The position numbers were made by a program, and so were the translations under genes. Below the pieces are notes generated by a model that worked only from the letters and a program-made list of their open reading frames with translations, had not been told where the DNA came from and did no database searches. Of a stretch of 64,000 bases of DNA, positions 15,021 through 24,207 are shown one piece after another (within the stretch, counting starts at the first letter, position 1; every line of letters begins with the position of its first letter). The DNA is from Styela clava (taxonomy: Eukaryota), in NCBI RefSeq assembly GCF_964204865.1, contig NC_135261.1, positions 15,376,001-15,440,000 on the forward strand, written 5' to 3'.

Positions 15021-16813
15021 TTTGATTGTTAAGTTTGACAAATTTGAGGAAAATCGCTATTTTCTTTAACAACTAGACCAATTACTTTGAAATTTTCATC
15101 GGATAAAGATTGTATTTTCCGCTAGAAGTCTATTACGTTCGTAATTCCTAGATTTCCCATGATATTTGATATTTCGCACAAATTTCACTGTATTATTAGG
15201 TAAAATGGCGCACATTGCAAAGTATAAAAATGTACCCCTTGATTTTAGCGACTGTTTTTGCATTGAAATACTTTATATACGTATTTTATTCAAAATTTTT
15301 ACAATTAAGTTTTCCGCCTTTTTTGCGCCCTATCCAAGCTGCGCCCATGGATGCCATACCCGAGCCCCAGATCTCCACTGTCCACCAGTAGGTACAGGGA
15401 AATATTCAACTTGGATTAATAAGCTACGAATTTCAACCTATCATCATTTACTTACATAATTCAATGATGCTCATTGCATAATTCAAATAAAACCACTACA
15501 GTATGCATCCAAGTAAGAATATATCAAATTTCAAATCCAACAAAGAATAGCACGTGTGAATGTTGTGACGTATTTTTGCATGAAGTAATAACACCCGGGA
15601 GGAATGCTTGTAGGCCTATCTGAGATAGAGTACCACTTGTTAATACATTTTTCTAAAAGGTAATTTTGCTAAGAATTGTTTTATGGTTGGTCGTCCAACT
15701 TTGTCATATAGCAGGGATGACGAGCATTTTGGTGAATGAGCCAAAAATTTTATTTTTAGTGTTGAAAATGTGACTTTTGGTCATAGAAGCATCATAAAAT
15801 ATCTTGGGGTTAATTTGAAGAGCAACGCGTTTTTGGATGTTTATTAATGTCACATTCACAAAGTAATAATTCATCCAAAATAATATAAACTGCAGAGCAT
15901 CATGGAGAAATAAAAACTATCTCGGAGAAAGCCACGCAATACATGGAAACGCTAAATTTTTGGAAATATTATTAAAAAGTCAGAAGCCCTGGCTTGTTGT
16001 TGGGCCACAAAATCATTTTCAGAACCGCTGTATTAGACTGAGAACTCTTAAAACACTTAAACAAAACGGTTGGTAGAATGTTATTTTTGCGTCATTGTTA
16101 AGGTTTTGGGGGCAATCATTGTTCTAAATCTAGATAAAGCAAATTATGCATATCGTATGTTTATTGTACATGTTAATAATTTTTTTTAATAAATTATCAA
16201 AAATTTTCTACAAAATACATGATATGTTTGTTGAATATTCCTAATTAAAATAAACTTCCAGATACACCACTGTACTATTCGACCAGGTGATGGATGTTGC
16301 ATAGTAACACTGCGTCGCCAAAGGTCTGTAATACCACCCAGTCCATTTCTATTTTGTCATGCTTTGTCGTTCAAAATATCAGTACGCATAAATATTTTTT
16401 TTGAAGATATCTCCCGTCTGTAAACGTTTTCCTATCAACGCAGGTTTCGCTTTCCACACCGATGGAACTGGTTCAATTCCTAATGATCATCACAACCAAG
16501 TGTTTGAGCAAAAGTATTCATTTATGAAACAATAGATGCAAAGACAAAATACAGAGATGGCATTTAAGAAAATGGAAACAATTATTTTACAAACAAGTCT
16601 TGAATGAGGCAAACAAACTAATCCACAATGTTAGGTTGTTACCCTTGGAAATCTGGAGATAAACAACCTTCATAAGAGAACCACATAGTAATTACCTTCA
16701 GATTTCCCAACAAAATGTCTGATTCATACGTTTTTATTTGATGCAAAACAGTTGCTGATAAGTAGTGAATCCGTATGGGTATTATTTATATATAATAAAA
16801 AATATAAAAAGGC

Positions 16814-19800
16814 CTATACAAAACCATCAACATGACCATTCTCGTCATACTCATTGGGATGGGGATCGGGGTGATAGTCATCCACCCATTCTGATCTTTT
16901 GTCATTGTGGTGACTCCCGTGACTTCTGTGACTTTTATGGCTTCTATGACTTCTATGACTCTTGTGAGACTTATGTGTGCGAGAGTGAGAATATCTACTG
17001 GAGTCGTCATCCCACTCGTCGTCGTCGTTACTCGGAGTCATCATCATTGCCTCAACAGGCTGAGAAGAAATTTCAACTTCTGCAAATGACGAAAATAAAT
17101 TTAATTTATTGTCATCGTTAATCTTCACCTAATCTAGGTGCTTTTACTAGTACAGACATCAAAATCGATGTTAAACAAGTAAATAGCATTATTTGTTCAG
17201 AGGTGTGGTGCTTTAACTCAAATTTCGAAATTAATAATTAGACATATGATATATATCTATATGAATATTTTTGCTAAATTGTTGCCTAATTGTTGTTGTT
17301 GTTGGGGTGATATTTTTAGTGTAGAATCTTGGAAGTAGTTGTCAAATTACCTCCTATGAGATCCGATATATGATCCAAAATTTCTCTATTTTCATTTTAA
17401 TTCACGGAAACACTGTTTTTATAGCACCAAGCTTGACCGGCTCGACCGCGAGTTTCCTTTGTTTCATTTTGCCAATCTCGTGCCCAGCCCTACCGTAGGC
17501 TACCGATTGTCATGCGACATGTTTTATGTTCTTAGACGTAGTCATTTGTCCTCCGCGTTGCTTTCTCGTTAAATATATATACGAAGCCATCTGTGCAAGT
17601 TTGCACAGAATTGCTTACTAATATATATATTATACGTATTTACCTGTAACAGGATGCTTCCATTCATACGAATTTTTATCCACCGGTCTATTGAAGCACG
17701 TGCAGCAAGTTAATATGCAGCCCAGTCCCAAGGATAACGCCATAGAAAACCATCCAATAAACAAACATGACCCCAACGTGTATTTCACTCTCGTTGTCTG
17801 ATAGTAAGGTGACCAATACTCTCTCACAACTTCGGCAGCGTACCAGGACACCGCAATCCCAGTCAAAACTCCTGCATAGTAGACAAAAGTTAATTCATTT
17901 AGCGGGAACTTTAACATTATTCGTGATCGTGTGGTGTAGGCGCGGCGGTGTGGCTCAACGGGCTAAGCGTTATGAATACGCTCGTCACCGCACCTCTAAT
18001 TACTCCGCGTGGGTTCGCAGGTTCGAATCCCATGCAGAGATGGTTATGTGCAAGAGGATTGCTGGACTCCTCGCCGTCGTTGGGTGGTTCACGTAACCGC
18101 TGGTCGGTTACGGCTCCCTCCACCACCAAGTCCATGCTTCCGAAAACAAACAATATAACTAATCCCATACCCGACTTGGAACGGTAACCAGACGAGAGGT
18201 CGTGTTTCGCCATATGGATAAGTCGTCTTATCGGCTTTCCTCTCCCCCGGGATAAATATGTAAATCCTATCCTATGTACGTTTCATTGTATACGACAGCG
18301 TTTTTGTAATCACAAGACCTCTTTCTATAGACTCCCGGTTGTGTGGTGATTACGGAGTACAAAGATCACAACATCAAGTCTATTTTCCTTTGAATAAAAT
18401 ATTTTAAAATGGAATTGCCATCATAATTAATAAAGTAATTAAAAACGCATAAAACGCAACGCAATAAACGCATAACGCAATAAAATTAAAAATATGATTC
18501 ATCATCAAGAGGCAAATTTACAATAACATGATGTGAGAGCAATTGTTGACAAGTATTTTATATTTTTTGTATTTTTCATTTTCACAAATCAGGGTTATGC
18601 ATCGGAAAGATATGAAAAGTAAGTTGACAATAATACGAATGTAAATTTTATAAGTAGTGTGGCAAATTTGATATTCGCCCCCAAAAAAGGCCATAATAAC
18701 ATATCCGGGGTACAGGAGACTCAGTAAGTAACGTAGTACACAGTTAAATTCGTTCCAAATATTTTAGTTTAATACAAACCGGCGATGATATGACATATTC
18801 CGGCACCAAGATTTATCCATCGTTTTGTTTTACTGTCTTCTCTGAATGCTCTGGTACATTTCATTCCGGCAAGAGAAAGGCAGAAGGCAATGGCTGATGT
18901 AACGAGAGCAATTGCCATAAATGCTCGATATGCGTCGAGATGTGCTGCGAAAATGATTAAACAGAAATCAATCTATATCTTTCGAATTGTATTAGTTATT
19001 ATACAAAACTTAATTCTAATTCGCCATGAAATACAAAACATGGAATGCCTAGCCCGACCATACAAGCGACTTTGTCGGATTTATAAAACCAATATTTGGA
19101 CAAAAGTCTTGTCATGGCGTCTTTAATGCATACTCTATTACTTCAAATTTGCTATTCTTCGGTACTTTAAAGGCTTTCACTTGTTTGAACATACTATTGC
19201 TATTTGAACTTGTCGTATGATACATATATACTCTATAAATGGAATCCATAGCATCACCACACCAAACAAAGCTGCTTTGTTTAAGCTAATACTTGGGTAA
19301 AAGTCTAGCCACGGTGTCATTAATGCATAACCTATATGCGTTTGAATTTGTAATTATACTGTACTTGAAGCATTGTAGAAGTTTGATCATACTATTGCTG
19401 TTTTAGCTCATAAAGACAAAGGTCAATTTGAGCTAGTGAATAATAACGACGACTTTTTATACTACAAAATTATACTGCAAGATATGTTTGGACTTTCGGC
19501 AATTAGTTCCAACCTGATTTCAAATATTCCCTTTTTATGAATAACCTATATAGTTTCACTATCATTTTATAGACAAAAGGTTTAGAATTATTTTCATAAT
19601 ATTCTAGGTTTCATGTAACATTTAAATGATATTCGTATATTAGCTGTCTATGAAAATATACTTCCATGTCACAAGAATAAATGGTACACTAAGATTTGAG
19701 GTTCTCTTTTCTCGTGTATATTTACGAAGGATTTTATCGATGCATTTCATTCATACTTGCTTAGATTCCACTGGAACGAGCAGTTTTTAGGATCTACTCA

Positions 19801-21655
19801 CGTGAAAATTTGGAATATTATTTTATTTACAGATTTTTGAATAACTTGCTCAAGATTTCACTGTAAGTAAACCTAGTGTAATGTATGAGCACGTGATATT
19901 GGAGGGTAAATTGTTTATATTGGAGATTCTGAAATGAAGTTTAATATTACTTTTGAACAGTATTTAAAAGGATAACGATGTAGAAACCTGACTAATATTT
20001 TAATTCTGTACTGTAAATTCGTCAGATAGCGCTTTTGGGCCCAAAATCAGACTTACATAAATTTATTTGAATATTGCTCATTCTTTCTCAAATGCTGAAT
20101 GCTTGTTTTTTGTTTTGTTTATAGTAGTAAGTAATTTATATTACTATACTACTAATATATACTAATATATAATATCTTTGTAGAAGCGAATTAACTTTCA
20201 GAATTGTAAATTTTGAGTATTTCGAGTGTTGTTTATTTTCGAAATTTTAATTCACTCAATTTCAATTCACTTAATTTCAATGTCAAATATTTCTCTCGAC
20301 TTATTTTGTTTTGCCCCATTTATGACGTAAGCTCTGACTAACTTTACAATCGTGTTTGTCAAATAGAAGTCTAATAAATTTCACTTTCTGTATTATATGT
20401 CGTAGTCACTTCTTATGTACTGATGCGATTTGAGAGCAGAAGCTTACTTTACATGTTTACGATTTTATAGATGATAGATGATTTCGAATTGCAATGACGA
20501 ATCGAAATGAGTAAACATCAAATTTCAAATGCTTGTAACATATTCTTGAGGTTAATAATTTATTTCTGAACACATTTCTTGTATTATATTTCTAGAGTAT
20601 GGCAATATATATTGGAGTTATTATGTAAAAGTCATATACATATAAGAAAATCCGATTAATATATAATCTTTTTTATAAAATTTGGAGAACGATTTTTGTG
20701 AAGCAAATTTGATCGATTTCCTTTTCAAATGGTATCGTAGGGTATCGACTGTTATCTCAGAATTTGTTTTTCCACACTACACTGCGTTTTCCTTATCTAC
20801 GTCACATATAATTTTTTTTTTGAATGAATTAGGGGAACTGTTCTCTGCTTGGCAAAAACTTACTTCGATAACAAGTTGAGTAACAATACAGTTATATCAT
20901 GAGACCACATCGCAATACAATATAGGTTTTTGCCACGGATTGGATACCTAGGTTGGACTTTATTGCATTTTTTTCTTGAACTCACTCGAAATAATGTCGT
21001 TTATTTTTGAATGAAAGGATCTAAAATTATGAGTTTAAAATAAAATAACCCAATATGAAAATATTCCTTTTTGGAAAGAATCGGTTTAATAAGTTGTAAA
21101 ACACTACTTTACAGTGCAATTTAAAAAGTATGTAAGTTAAATTTCCATGAACTTGCTGAATTAAAATTAGAAGTAAAATAACAACTAATAAATTATTTAA
21201 CTATTTTTAATACAAGACAACATTTTTAAGTATGTAATAAATTGTACAGCGCTTTGAAATTCATATTTGTATAAATAGCCTATCTGACGGTTTCAGCACA
21301 CTTTGGTACGTGAAAAAGCTACGATTTTGTTGTCGACTTGTAAACTATTTTGATCATTTAAATGATTCTTACCGTAGATGCCATACTTGTAATAAGAGTT
21401 TGACACCCAAGTTTTACTGGAAGCTTGACGAGTTGACATCTGACCAATTTGATAGCATTGAGTTTGCTGGCGGTAGAAAGACATGCATTCCATCCATAAT
21501 CCTTCATATCCCCATACGTTATTGAATGCATTTATCGTTGCTTGCATCGCTGTTGTTCTCCAGAACGGAGCGGCAAATACAAATATTACCGCAACCAAAT
21601 TGAATCCTCCCAAAATTGCAGTTATCAAGCGGAGTCTGGCGCTGGACACCGCCAT
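16814..21655 (-). CDS. Claudin; exons 21655-21418, 18944-18780, 17871-17644 (or read through to stop at 17630), 17079-16814
   Basis: First extracellular loop signature W...GLWMEC...QC; exon 2 HLDAYRAFM...GMKCT; exon 3 AVSWYA...YTLGSCLFIGW; four TM segments; all junctions phase 1 and GT-AG. Confidence 0.92.
17939..18275 (+). mobile_element. tRNA-derived SINE, apparently full length, in claudin intron 2
   Basis: Pol III A box TGGCTCAACGG, B box GGTTCGAATCC (18020-18030), tail (atcct)n; related copies at 59057-59237 and 60568-60992. Confidence 0.85.
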
Positions 21656-24207
21656 AATGATATTGTCGATTAAACTATGAACTTATATTTCACTATTTAA
21701 ATGAATACAAAGTACACGTTATTTTCTTCATCTGTCATGCTTTTACTGTGGATTAATCAATACAGACATATACATTGCGTCCCAAAACGCAATGAGTTGG
21801 GAAACATTTTGCCTTGATTTGACGCTAATTTAATAATAAAAAAAAAAAATTCAGAGAAATTGGATAATACCAACAAAGTTAAATTTGTACTGTTCATCTT
21901 TCAGAGTTATCCTCCATCTTTTTATGTCACTCACATCTCCATTCTCTATGTACTTATCTCACTCTCCCAATCTTTTCAATTCGACCGTTGAGTGGGAAAT
22001 AGACTTCAAATAAGCTACTAAAAATTAAGCTACCCTGAGATATTTTACCAATACGATTGTAGTAGGGGCAATTACTAATTCGAAAGATCTCAGCCTACAG
22101 GGGCGAAGCTAATGCATTGGTGGAGAACCGATGCCACCCACACATGTCTACGTAAACATTCTAAAACAAAGACACCAGAGAGCCATCTAACATTTAATAA
22201 TATCTCAAATACGCTGGTTTGAAAACTTCTGAGCCAGGTATAAGACAATGATAAGTTAGCTTTACTATATATGTGGGCCATGAGTGTTCACAATAAAAGA
22301 ATATTATATTGAAGAGCAAATAAGTCAGTATGTTTGTAATGTCGTAATCGTGTACACATAACGATCCCGCAACGTAATACCTCACTCCTAGTTACGCTTT
22401 GCCAGATGAACTAGTTGGATATTAAAATTTCCATGTATGCTATACCGTTAATATAACAAACATTGTTAAAGTGCGTAAAGTTGAAAAATTTTCAATAAAA
22501 TCTACTACGAATACAAAAGCTTGCTGAATCTGACCGCAACTTTGTATTCCTAAATGCAACAAGTGTCCGATTTTTTATCTATACCATTTTTGTATATAAT
22601 TTTGAAAACCGGTCCTAAGTTTTGTCAAAACTGAAATTCTTTGTAAATTTTCGATTGAACCATCTTAAGGACATAAAAGGAAACGAAATGTTTTTTTAGT
22701 AAGAAATAGAATGCTGAATGCGATGGATAATTTTGTAAGACATTATTTAATTTTACTCCTCCAGTGCAATTGTACAGATTTTGCATTCACGGCCACCCTG
22801 GCAGAAATAAAGATCGCTCAATTTATATCACAAAGTAAATAACAAGTTTATATCAATGAACTTTTTTTACGTGAAAAAGAATATACATTTGAAAAGTTAA
22901 ATAATGGCACAACTTGGAATCAAATTCAGATTATTTTTTCATAATTTTGTTATTACACTATTACATATTAAAATAAGGTTGACCCTTTTGTATTTTTGAT
23001 TTCTTGAATGTTAATATCGTTCACCAAATATGATTCACGCTTGCCATATTGACTTTGTGGCTTGGCACATCATTTTCTTGTGATACAGATGACGTATTTT
23101 CTATCTGCTACAGTACCTTTGCATTTTCTCATTCTTTCAACCGAAGACTTTTTAGTTAGTTATGGAATATATATATATAAATTGTTGTTCTATAAGTTAT
23201 ATCTAATTTCTATTTTCCGTACTGAATGATAAAAGAGGTAATATTTTGACATAGATGACCCTCAATAAGTACATTTTAAATCCCAATTCAAGAATCTGCC
23301 CATACCTCCTTTAATAACTGAAGCGCTTCGCAGTTTTGTCTTCCAGCAGGCAATGGATAATTTTGTTAATAAATGCATTTTTCTTCTGCTTCATCAATAT
23401 GAAGTTGCTTATGTTTAGTCCTTACTCGCGTTTGAAATAATGAAACACGATCTTGTCTATAACTTCACTAAAACTCTGGGATAGCATTGATAATTTTTAA
23501 TTTATCGCGAAATAAGAAAAACTGTTTTTTAGCTTAGCAAATTTATAGAGAAGCTTAACACATAAGAATTATATATATTCTGCAAATTCTTGGTATGGGG
23601 GTTTTGGTGAGCAGTTCTGCTGAGGGCTCGGCTTTGTATTATTCACGGGATAGGATTTCATAAGTAGGCTATATTCGAAAAAATGGAAGCTGATAAAAGA
23701 ACACGCGGGATTCTGTGACGTGGTAATATCTAAAGGATTCAATTTATATCCAAGAGTTGTATTTGAAAACTACCACTAGATGTTGAAAAAGAGCAAAGGT
23801 ATTCCGAAACCATTATTCCTATTTTAAAGATGATCACGCCAACCCTTCTCTTATCGATTCTTTCTTATCTACCACCACCTCGCGGCTGACTAAAATTTAA
23901 AATCAAGCCCATCAATAAATTGAATGAATTGAGCGTTCAGACTAAATCACATTCTCGTACAATAGTGTTCATGAGTCGGGAGTATAAATCCGCAGCATTT
24001 AGGACAAATGTGAATGCATACGAAGATGTCGCGAAATGAATATATTCAGTCGATGCTTACAAAGGTTCAATGAAAGTCGGGTCCCTTTGTATAATTCATA
24101 ATTATATACTGCCCCGTTGTAATTGACTATACGTCATTGAATAGAATATTGCTGCTTTGTTGACGTTGGTTGTACCACAAGTGTTTTTCAGCGAATTCTA
24201 AAATGAG

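What the first reader, a model, noticed from the sequence alone, without database searches (positions are those of the whole stretch)
16814..17871. Claudin with a splice switch between two PDZ-ending C-termini (-GKYV and -GFV)
Seen: exon 3 contains a donor ACAG|GTAAAT at 17644/17643. If it is not used, the frame reads GGT AAA TAC GTA TAA, giving -GKYV*. If it is used, it joins in phase to the acceptor at 17081/17080 and adds ~88 aa ending -DGFV*. Poly(A) signals exist for both forms (ATTAAA ~17400 and AATAAA ~17108 inside the intron; AATAAA ~16735 downstream). Established: a terminal YV is the ZO-1 PDZ1-binding motif of classic claudins. Inference: the first intron bases encode a perfect claudin terminus, so both isoforms are probably under selection. 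This would be a tail-swap system regulating tight-junction scaffolding.
Basis: partly seen in the sequence, partly recalled or inferred. Interest (0 to 1): 0.8.

Follow-up and report, generated by a model that had tools for sequence, protein, structure and literature searches.

The report
Sea-squirt claudin with extra tail exon
This is an already annotated sea-squirt tight-junction (claudin) gene whose fourth exon adds a long tail, and the proposed switch to a shorter tail does not appear in the RNA data available.

Summary
The sequence observation is correct. On the minus strand a four-exon claudin gene has the exon 3 donor ACAG|GTAAAT at 17644/17643. Unspliced, the frame reads G-K-Y-V-stop. 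Spliced to 17079, it adds 88 residues ending DGFV.

- **Identity:** it is Styela clava RefSeq XP_039252801.2, 313 aa, a single annotated isoform.
- **RNA:** assembled contigs of 3 of 3 RNA-like runs, from three studies, carry the exon 3-exon 4 junction. None (0 of 3) has any depth in intron 3.
- **Long tail:** it is conserved. All 14 of 14 long ascidian forms end in GFV, and one genomic contig of an unnamed species has the same phase-1 intron.
- **Read-through end:** KYV-stop is not conserved. Three other species read GNSFAFLYI, RK and GQLIKISKIICV.
- **Chance:** 6 of 1151 control GGT sites also read through to YV-stop.
- **Family norm:** three Styela paralogues end in YV.
- **Precedent:** vertebrate claudin-19 a/b is a known switch of this design, but the tree does not place this gene with claudin-19.

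Verdict: most likely a constitutively spliced claudin. The switch is unsupported but not excluded, because contigs can miss minor forms. Interest is low to moderate.

The parts
21373..21655 (-). Exon 1 coding part (ATG at 21655): TM1 and the first extracellular loop with the W..GLW..C..C motif. The donor is TACG|GTAAGA in phase 1. The 5' UTR reaches at least 21686.
   Evidence: RNA contigs X1 record 1 and X2 record 6 end this exon at 21373, and X1 record 5 reaches 21686. Pfam profile positions 4-59. Motif at residues 32-67.
18780..18944 (-). Exon 2 (165 bases): TM2, the intracellular loop and the start of TM3. The donor is GCCG|GTTTGT in phase 1.
   Evidence: RNA contigs of X1 and X2 cover 18779-18944; the shared G makes 18779 and 18780 equivalent. 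Pfam profile positions 73-112.
17940..18275 (.). High-copy interspersed repeat inside intron 2. It is not part of the gene's function.
   Evidence: Depth reaches 5.2 million in DNA run X9 against about 500 beside it, and loose ends pile up at 17939-17941 and 18270-18277 in all four runs. No tRNA and no Rfam family.
17644..17871 (-). Exon 3 (228 bases): end of TM3, second extracellular loop, TM4, the CCxC motif and the membrane-near tail up to ...KHPVT.
   Evidence: RNA contigs of X1, X2 and X3 all end at 17644. Pfam profile positions 116-160. 61-65% identical to the best ascidian matches.
17630..17644 (-). Read-through codons GGT AAA TAC GTA TAA (G-K-Y-V-stop). The first six intron bases, GTAAAT, are the donor signal.
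   Evidence: Sequence. No RNA contig depth here beyond 17644 in 0 of 3 runs. Control rate 6 of 1151.
17080..17643 (-). Intron 3 (564 bases, phase 1, GT..AG). It holds a fragment of a dispersed repeat at about 17352-17443 that covers the ATTAAA at 17401.
   Evidence: Skipped in RNA contigs of 3 of 3 runs and continuous in DNA run X9. The repeat has 32 other matches at 73-86% identity in the genome.
16814..17079 (-). Exon 4 coding part (88 residues with the split codon; stop TAG at 16816-16814). The tail is hydrophilic and rich in Ser, His and Asp, and ends D-G-F-V.
   Evidence: RNA contigs X1 and X2. Composition and hydropathy. GFV invariant in 4 of 4 aligned orthologues and in 14 of 14 long ascidian forms. 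No paralogue of this exon in the genome.
16907..16990 (-). S-H-[KR] repeat block (residues 256-283) with a 9-base in-frame length polymorphism at 16961.
   Evidence: The insertion is seen in RNA contigs X1 and X2 but not in DNA run X9. The earlier RefSeq version, P0074, is 316 aa with one more KSH unit.
16501..16813 (-). 3' UTR, at least as far as the X1 contig reaches. AATAAA at 16738 is read through; CATAAA and AATGAA lie at 16526 and 16522.
   Evidence: X1 record 1 spans 16501-17079. Hexamer positions. Contigs cannot show true RNA ends.

Best explanation
This is a constitutively spliced, four-exon claudin gene of the ascidian Styela clava. Exons 1-3 build the four-helix claudin body and a short membrane-near tail. 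Exon 4 adds a long, probably disordered cytoplasmic tail rich in Ser, His and Asp that ends in G-F-V. That end is a YV-like C-terminus and presumably docks the protein to PDZ scaffolds of the ZO type; this last step is inferred, not tested. The in-frame G-K-Y-V-stop just past the exon 3 donor is most likely not used. Three of its five codons are partly or wholly dictated by the donor signal GGTAAAT, and the remaining ACGTATAA looks like a claudin end by coincidence.
For: - Junctions 21373|18944, 18780|17871 and 17644|17079 stand in one 1225-base contig of X1 and one 757-base contig of X2. In X3 a 264-base contig covers exon 3, and its 29 further letters fall on 17051-17079 by depth arithmetic. 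That is 3 of 3 RNA-like runs from three studies.
- Intron 3 depth is 0 in 3 of 3 of those runs, while DNA run X9 covers it without a joint.
- There is no second genomic copy of exon 3 or exon 4, so the joined form is not a retrocopy.
- RefSeq's model is the same 313-aa protein, with one isoform only.
- The long tail and its GFV end are conserved in Ciona intestinalis, Clavelina lepadiformis and two unnamed species.
- Between haplotypes, exon 4 shows 3 synonymous and 2 conservative changes plus an in-frame 9-base indel.
- Read-through ends differ in 3 of 3 other species.
- Chance rate of a YV-stop read-through: 6 of 1151.
- Intronic poly(A) hexamers are at background density and one lies in a repeat.
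Against: - A 0.5% coincidence falling exactly on the family's own terminal motif, at the tail length where paralogues end (about 21 residues after CCxC against 26-28 in paralogues), is suggestive.
- Vertebrate claudin-19 uses this very design.
- The Ciona read-through model ends in Y-I, also aromatic-aliphatic.
- The RNA evidence consists of assembled contigs, which drop rare variants. The runs are only guessed to be RNA, and their tissues and stages are unknown.
- No close relative of Styela clava could be examined.
Confidence: 0.6

Rival explanations
1. There is a real two-tail switch. In some tissues or stages the exon 3 donor is skipped, by intron retention or intronic polyadenylation. This gives a 229-residue classic claudin ending in KYV beside the 313-residue long form ending in GFV. 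The two forms would differ in the spacing and content of the tail between the membrane and the PDZ ligand. This would be a convergent counterpart of vertebrate claudin-19 a/b.
For: - The YV-stop sits exactly at the donor.
- YV is the end of 3 of 3 Styela paralogues whose last exon was found.
- The control rate is only 6 of 1151.
- Claudin-19 precedent: the dog and frog short forms end ...RE-YV, while the long forms continue after ...RE with another exon. Cldn19a and Cldn19b are used as distinct proteins in PMC9411157 and bioRxiv 10.1101/768267 (passages).
- Retention of the last intron leaves no downstream junction, so such an mRNA should escape nonsense-mediated decay (general knowledge).
Against: - 0 of 3 RNA-like runs have any contig in the intron, with the spliced contig at depth 159 in X1.
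- RefSeq has a single isoform.
- The read-through is not conserved in 3 of 3 other ascidians.
- The donor GTAAAT is no weaker than the gene's other donors, GTAAGA and GTTTGT.
- There is no enrichment of poly(A) hexamers in the intron.
Confidence: 0.27
2. The KYV-stop is a leftover of the ancestral claudin end. The ancestral gene stopped with YV in what is now exon 3, as paralogues still do. The tail exon was then captured through a donor just upstream, and the old end has lingered in the intron without present use.
For: - The paralogue at C8:19.72 Mb has a last exon that starts at the same place as exon 3 and runs to ...MQYV-stop.
- The nearest outgroup protein, P0011, whose best match in this genome is this gene's exon 3 and which is sister in the tree, has an internal AYV at about that distance after the CC motif. 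It also has a longer tail ending DGYV.
Against: - The tail exon is shared by Styela, Ciona, Clavelina and two unnamed species, so it is old.
- An unused 9-base stretch in an intron should not survive that long.
- The first intron bases of the other species show nothing alike beyond the donor.
- Intron 3 has since taken up a repeat.
Confidence: 0.08

Closest known systems
Vertebrate claudin-19 isoforms a and b (CLDN19a/CLDN19b)
   Same: A claudin whose short form ends in YV and whose long form replaces exactly those last residues with a tail from a further exon.
- Dog P0101 (211 aa) ends ...AAARE-YV; mink P0095 (224 aa) ends ...AAARE-PVVKLSASAKGPLGV.
- Frog P0113 ends ...TTRE-YV; frog P0092 ends ...TTRE-ATKIPIKKKEETS.
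- The dog Cldn19b reverse primer in PMC11740656 encodes ...R-E-Y-V-stop (passage).
- By name, claudin-19 is the commonest vertebrate match of the Styela protein.
   Different: - In claudin-19 both forms are cloned and used. Here only the long form is seen.
- The donor there appears to lie inside the Glu codon (phase 2, my inference from the primer and the two protein ends) and two codons before the stop. Here it is phase 1 and four codons before the stop.
- The tree puts the Styela gene with YV- or YI-ended non-vertebrate-type claudins, not with claudin-19. Any likeness would therefore be convergent.
Ciona intestinalis 'claudin-4-like/claudin-1-like/claudin-15-like' isoforms X1-X4 and Clavelina lepadiformis 'claudin-1-like' X1 and X3 (RefSeq)
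   Same: These are orthologues.
- 58-63% identity over exon 3.
- The same kind of tail, rich in Ser, Arg, His and Lys, with an invariant GFV end.
- A Ciona short model (F6PSB3, P0003) departs from the long forms at the matching point, which fits a phase-1 G|GT donor there too.
   Different: - Ciona has four and Clavelina at least two alternative first exons. The Styela window holds only one.
- Their read-through peptides do not end in YV.
- The tails are alike in make-up and end, not in alignable sequence: tblastn of the orthologues finds no tail match in the window.
Classic claudins with a short tail ending in YV (for example claudin-1; Styela paralogues on contigs C4 and C8)
   Same: - Four-helix body, the W..GLW..C..C loop motif and a CC motif after TM4.
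- A terminal aromatic-Val. Reviews state that nearly all claudins end in a PDZ-binding motif for ZO-1/2/3 (PMC3867514 and PMC12984813, passages).
   Different: The expressed form carries about 105 residues after the CCxC motif instead of about 20-30, and ends in FV rather than YV. FV ends also occur naturally in vertebrates: bird claudin-19 P0124 and two claudin-8-like proteins.

Membership tests
Claudin (PMP-22/EMP/MP20/claudin superfamily, PF00822) | Profile match above the curated cut-off | tested here: met
   RefSeq protein P0001 scores 55.5 bits against a cut-off of 26.7, and PF13903 scores 35.5 against 29.1. Searched apart, exons 1-3 match profile positions 4-59, 73-112 and 116-160 colinearly, each below the cut-off alone.
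Claudin (PMP-22/EMP/MP20/claudin superfamily, PF00822) | Four transmembrane segments and the W..GLW..C..C motif in the first extracellular loop | tested here: met
   Hydrophobic stretches at about 6-33, 99-125, 137-165 and 181-210; motif within residues 32-67. The form of the motif is recalled knowledge.
Claudin (PMP-22/EMP/MP20/claudin superfamily, PF00822) | C-terminal PDZ ligand that binds ZO-type scaffolds; location at tight junctions | not testable with these tools
   The sequence ends in GFV, which is YV-like. Binding and localisation need experiments.
Claudin-19 a/b type C-terminal splice switch | A donor just upstream of a YV-stop, so that non-splicing yields a YV end and splicing yields another tail | tested here: met
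   The donor at 17644/17643 is followed by G-K-Y-V-stop. Splicing to 17079 gives the GFV tail.
Claudin-19 a/b type C-terminal splice switch | Both mRNA forms are made | tested here: inconclusive
   The spliced form is in 3 of 3 RNA-like runs and the unspliced form in 0 of 3. RefSeq has one isoform. Contigs drop rare variants and the tissues are unknown.
Claudin-19 a/b type C-terminal splice switch | The short YV end is conserved in relatives | tested here: not met
   0 of 3 other ascidian species read YV-stop after the donor: Ciona ...LYI, the P0002 species RK, the L044 species ...ICV. All three are distant; no close relative was available.
Claudin-19 a/b type C-terminal splice switch | Orthology with vertebrate claudin-19 | tested here: not met
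   In a quick maximum-likelihood tree of 43 rows, the four ascidian GFV proteins (support 93) sit with P0011 and other YV- or YI-ended proteins. These include a Styela paralogue. They lie across a branch of support 91 from claudin-19, claudin-1-like and claudin-8-like. Only part of the vertebrate family was sampled, and the root is at the midpoint only.

The most novel reading that the evidence does not exclude
Styela clava really makes two claudins from this gene. One is a short classic form ending in KYV, made when the last intron is not removed. The other is a long form ending in GFV. This would be an independent reinvention in a tunicate of the vertebrate claudin-19 a/b design, in which the splice donor sits on the doorstep of the PDZ ligand. 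It would suggest that the YV-stop region of claudin genes is a recurrent site for capturing tail exons while the old end stays usable.
Probability: 0.25. Interest if true: 0.5.

Novelty: new member of a known kind. Interest (0 to 1): 0.3.

Why it matters
As it stands, this is a correctly annotated claudin gene, and the value of the check is to remove an over-reading.

Two things are still worth knowing:
- Ascidians share a claudin lineage with a long basic tail rich in His and Ser and an invariant GFV end. I found no description of it in the two literature searches made (listings only).
- If the short KYV form were ever found, it would be a second, independent case of the claudin-19 a/b design. 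It would also give a tractable invertebrate-chordate model for asking what the length and content of a claudin tail do to scaffold binding.

Tried and rejected
- **Orthologue DNA.** I fell back on protein models that run into the intron (P0003, P0002, P0006) and on one scan of metagenome contigs. That scan gave a genomic contig of the P0006 species.
- **Close relatives.** The search for homologous proteins with the exon 3 frame, as 95 aa and as 80 aa, came back blank, although P0002 and P0006 share long words with the query. I treat this as uninformative.
- **Second haplotype or retrocopy in the assembly.** None found.
- **Alternative first exons as in Ciona.** None in the window.
- **Neutral leftover of the old stop.** Considered and ranked low because of the age of the tail exon and the lack of any likeness among the intron starts.
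- **Homology of the design with claudin-19.** Considered. It is not supported by the tree or by the inferred intron phase.
- **Literature.** No passage I read states which claudin-19 form has the PDZ motif, so I rely on the sequences and the primer. No supplementary file was opened.
- **Intron 2 repeat.** tRNA and Rfam searches found nothing.
- **Earlier notes of this scan** did not bear on this gene.
Full report
**What is there.** The gene is on the minus strand and has four exons.
- Exon 1 runs from the ATG at 21655 to 21373. Exon 2 is 18944-18780 and exon 3 is 17871-17644.
- Exon 4 runs from 17079 to the stop TAG at 16816-16814.
- All three introns are phase 1 and begin G|GT.
- The coding length is 283+165+228+263 = 939 bases, or 313 codons.
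- The exon 3 donor is ACAG|GTAAAT. If it is not used, the frame reads GGT AAA TAC GTA TAA, that is G-K-Y-V-stop. If it is used, exon 4 adds residues 226-313, ending D-G-F-V.

**How I searched.** I searched the model exon by exon and made no search with a joined model of my own.
- Translated apart, exons 1, 2 and 3 match Pfam PF00822 colinearly at profile positions 4-59, 73-112 and 116-160. Each is below the cut-off alone, and exon 4 matches nothing.
- A search of the 50% representatives with exon 3 returned a 313-aa protein that is 100% identical over residues 150-225 (P0001). The collection names it XP_039252801.2, claudin-8-like, Styela clava. An older 316-aa version is called claudin-1-like.
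- P0001 equals my four-exon reading. It passes PF00822 at 55.5 bits against a cut-off of 26.7. It has four hydrophobic segments and the W..GLW..C..C loop motif.

**RNA evidence.** The one read-laying run put three runs guessed to be RNA (X1, X2, X3, from three studies) and one DNA run (X9) on 16300-22000.
- X1 has a 1225-base contig in four pieces: 21616-21373, 18944-18779, 17870-17644 and 17079-16501.
- X2 has a 757-base contig with the same three junctions.
- X3 has a 264-base contig over 17872-17644. Its 29 further letters account exactly for the small depths in the bins holding 17051-17079; this is my arithmetic.
- In all three runs the two bins wholly inside intron 3 (17255-17636) have depth 0. 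The partial bins are fully explained by exon bases.
- X9 covers the whole stretch with no such joint.
- Exon 3 and exon 4 each have only one genomic match, so the joined form is spliced RNA and not a retrocopy.

So the exon 3-exon 4 splice is real and is the only form assembled. The tool warns that contigs show presence, not absence, and that 'RNA' is a guess for these runs. The exact GT..AG joints and the empty introns argue that they are RNA.

**Exon 4 is a conserved coding exon.**
- The nearest proteins are four Ciona intestinalis isoforms and two Clavelina lepadiformis isoforms in RefSeq, plus unnamed transcript-like JGI proteins.
- All 14 of 14 long forms fetched end in GFV. In the whole-protein alignment G311, F312 and V313 are invariant in 4 of 4.
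- The tails share make-up (Ser, Arg, His, Lys, Asp) rather than alignable sequence: tblastn of the orthologues finds exons 1-3 in the window but not exon 4.
- A 53-kb metagenome contig of the P0006 species shows the same architecture. Its exon 3 ends ...SYPTSAP and the donor is G|GTCAGT in phase 1. About 2.3 kb further on, an acceptor is followed by a tail ending RASGFV-stop. The splice in that species is inferred.
- Within Styela clava, the RNA haplotypes differ from the assembly in exon 4 by 3 synonymous and 2 conservative changes (D250E, R268K). They also carry an in-frame 9-base insertion in the S-H-[KR] repeats, which matches the older 316-aa RefSeq version.
- The 3' UTR shows 6 differences in 313 bases.

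**Is the KYV-stop meaningful?**

For:
- YV is this family's normal end here. The three Styela paralogues whose last exon lay in the fetched loci end TEYV, EEYV and MQYV.
- One of them has a last exon that starts where exon 3 starts.
- The read-through tail would have a typical length.

Against:
- In three other ascidian species the frame past the matching donor reads GNSFAFLYI-stop (the Ciona model F6PSB3), RK-stop (P0002) and GQLIKISKIICV-stop (L044). Nothing is shared beyond the donor.
- G, K and the first base of the Tyr codon are given by GGTAAAT.
- As a control, I read all 1151 GGT sites of the window as phase-1 donors. Six (0.52%) end in YV-stop and 44 (3.8%) end in [YF][VIL]-stop.
- The intronic poly(A) hexamers are at the window's background density. 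The ATTAAA at 17401 lies in a dispersed repeat with 32 other matches.
- The donor is not weaker than the gene's other two.

**Closest known system.** The commonest vertebrate matches of P0001 are named claudin-19, at about 97 bits, close to claudin-1-like and claudin-8-like.
- Claudin-19 sequences from that search show a true switch of the proposed kind. The short forms end ...RE-YV, and the long forms continue after ...RE with another tail, in mammals and in frogs.
- Passages in PMC9411157, PMC11740656 and bioRxiv 10.1101/768267 show Cldn19a and Cldn19b handled as distinct proteins. The dog Cldn19b reverse primer encodes ...REYV-stop.
- PMC7140793 (passage) gives five exons and 224 aa for human CLDN19.
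- PMC11203038 (passage) lists CLDN1, CLDN19 and CLDN18 as having tunicate orthologues.
- A quick tree of 43 rows does not place the ascidian GFV group with claudin-19. The group joins P0011 and other YV- or YI-ended proteins, among them a Styela paralogue (P0015). It lies across a branch of support 91 from the vertebrate rows.
- P0011 is an unnamed 263-aa protein ending DGYV whose best match in this genome is this gene.
- The inferred intron phase also differs: phase 2 in claudin-19, phase 1 here. Any likeness is therefore best read as convergent.

**Mechanism and odds.**
- Shown: the gene is transcribed and spliced into a 313-aa claudin with a long tail ending in GFV.
- Inferred: the tail is disordered (hydrophilic throughout), and its FV end serves as the PDZ ligand. 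FV ends occur naturally in bird claudin-19 and in two claudin-8-like proteins.

| Reading | Odds |
|---|---|
| The KYV-stop is an unused coincidence | about 0.6 |
| It marks a real, so far unseen short isoform | about 0.27 |
| It is an unselected leftover of the old end | about 0.08 |

The main weights are these. The 0.5% coincidence and the claudin-19 precedent favour a switch. The empty intron in three assemblies, the single RefSeq isoform and the lack of conservation count against it.

**Limits.**
- No raw reads, tissues or stages were available, and no close relative of Styela clava.
- Two protein searches were blank.
- The tree samples only part of the vertebrate family.
- No supplementary files were consulted.

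Noticed in passing
window 17940-18275 (intron 2): A roughly 336-base interspersed repeat of very high copy number. Depth reaches 5.2 million in the DNA run against about 500 beside it, and it is also abundant in the RNA-like runs. ARAGORN and Rfam find nothing in it.
   Followed up: partly
window about 17352-17443 (intron 3): A fragment of a second dispersed repeat, with 32 other matches in the genome at 73-86% identity.
   Followed up: partly
window 16907-16990, indel at 16961: The S-H-[KR] repeat block of the tail varies in length within the species. A 9-base in-frame insertion is present in two RNA runs and in the older RefSeq protein version, and absent from this assembly.
   Followed up: yes
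Proteins P0084, P0005, P0083, P0076 (Ciona) and P0082, P0007 (Clavelina): The orthologous gene has four alternative first exons in Ciona and at least two in Clavelina, each encoding a different TM1 and first extracellular loop. This recalls vertebrate claudin-10 and claudin-18. The Styela window, 42 kb upstream included, holds only one first exon.
   Followed up: partly
L002/L006 (G000:C4:16.94 Mb), locus L006 positions 1308-1436 and 1501-1623: A paralogous claudin gene has two adjacent, similar exon-3-like segments about 65 bases apart. Both are open and both are followed by GT. They are candidates for mutually exclusive exons.
   Followed up: no
window 21587-21686: A 130-base contig of X1 matches only with its first 100 letters, up to 21686. 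The other 30 letters lie on nothing in the stretch. This could be a 5' leader added by splicing or an allelic difference.
   Followed up: no
window 21444-21445 (exon 1): A second in-phase G|GT (G|GTCAGA) inside exon 1 would give a first loop 24 residues shorter. The RNA contigs use only the downstream donor at 21373.
   Followed up: partly
Protein P0011 (unnamed, JGI transcript-like contigs): This is the nearest outgroup of the GFV claudins. It has an internal AYV at about the place where short claudins end, followed by a tail rich in Arg and Ser that ends DGYV. That hints the tail extension is older than the GFV end.
   Followed up: partly
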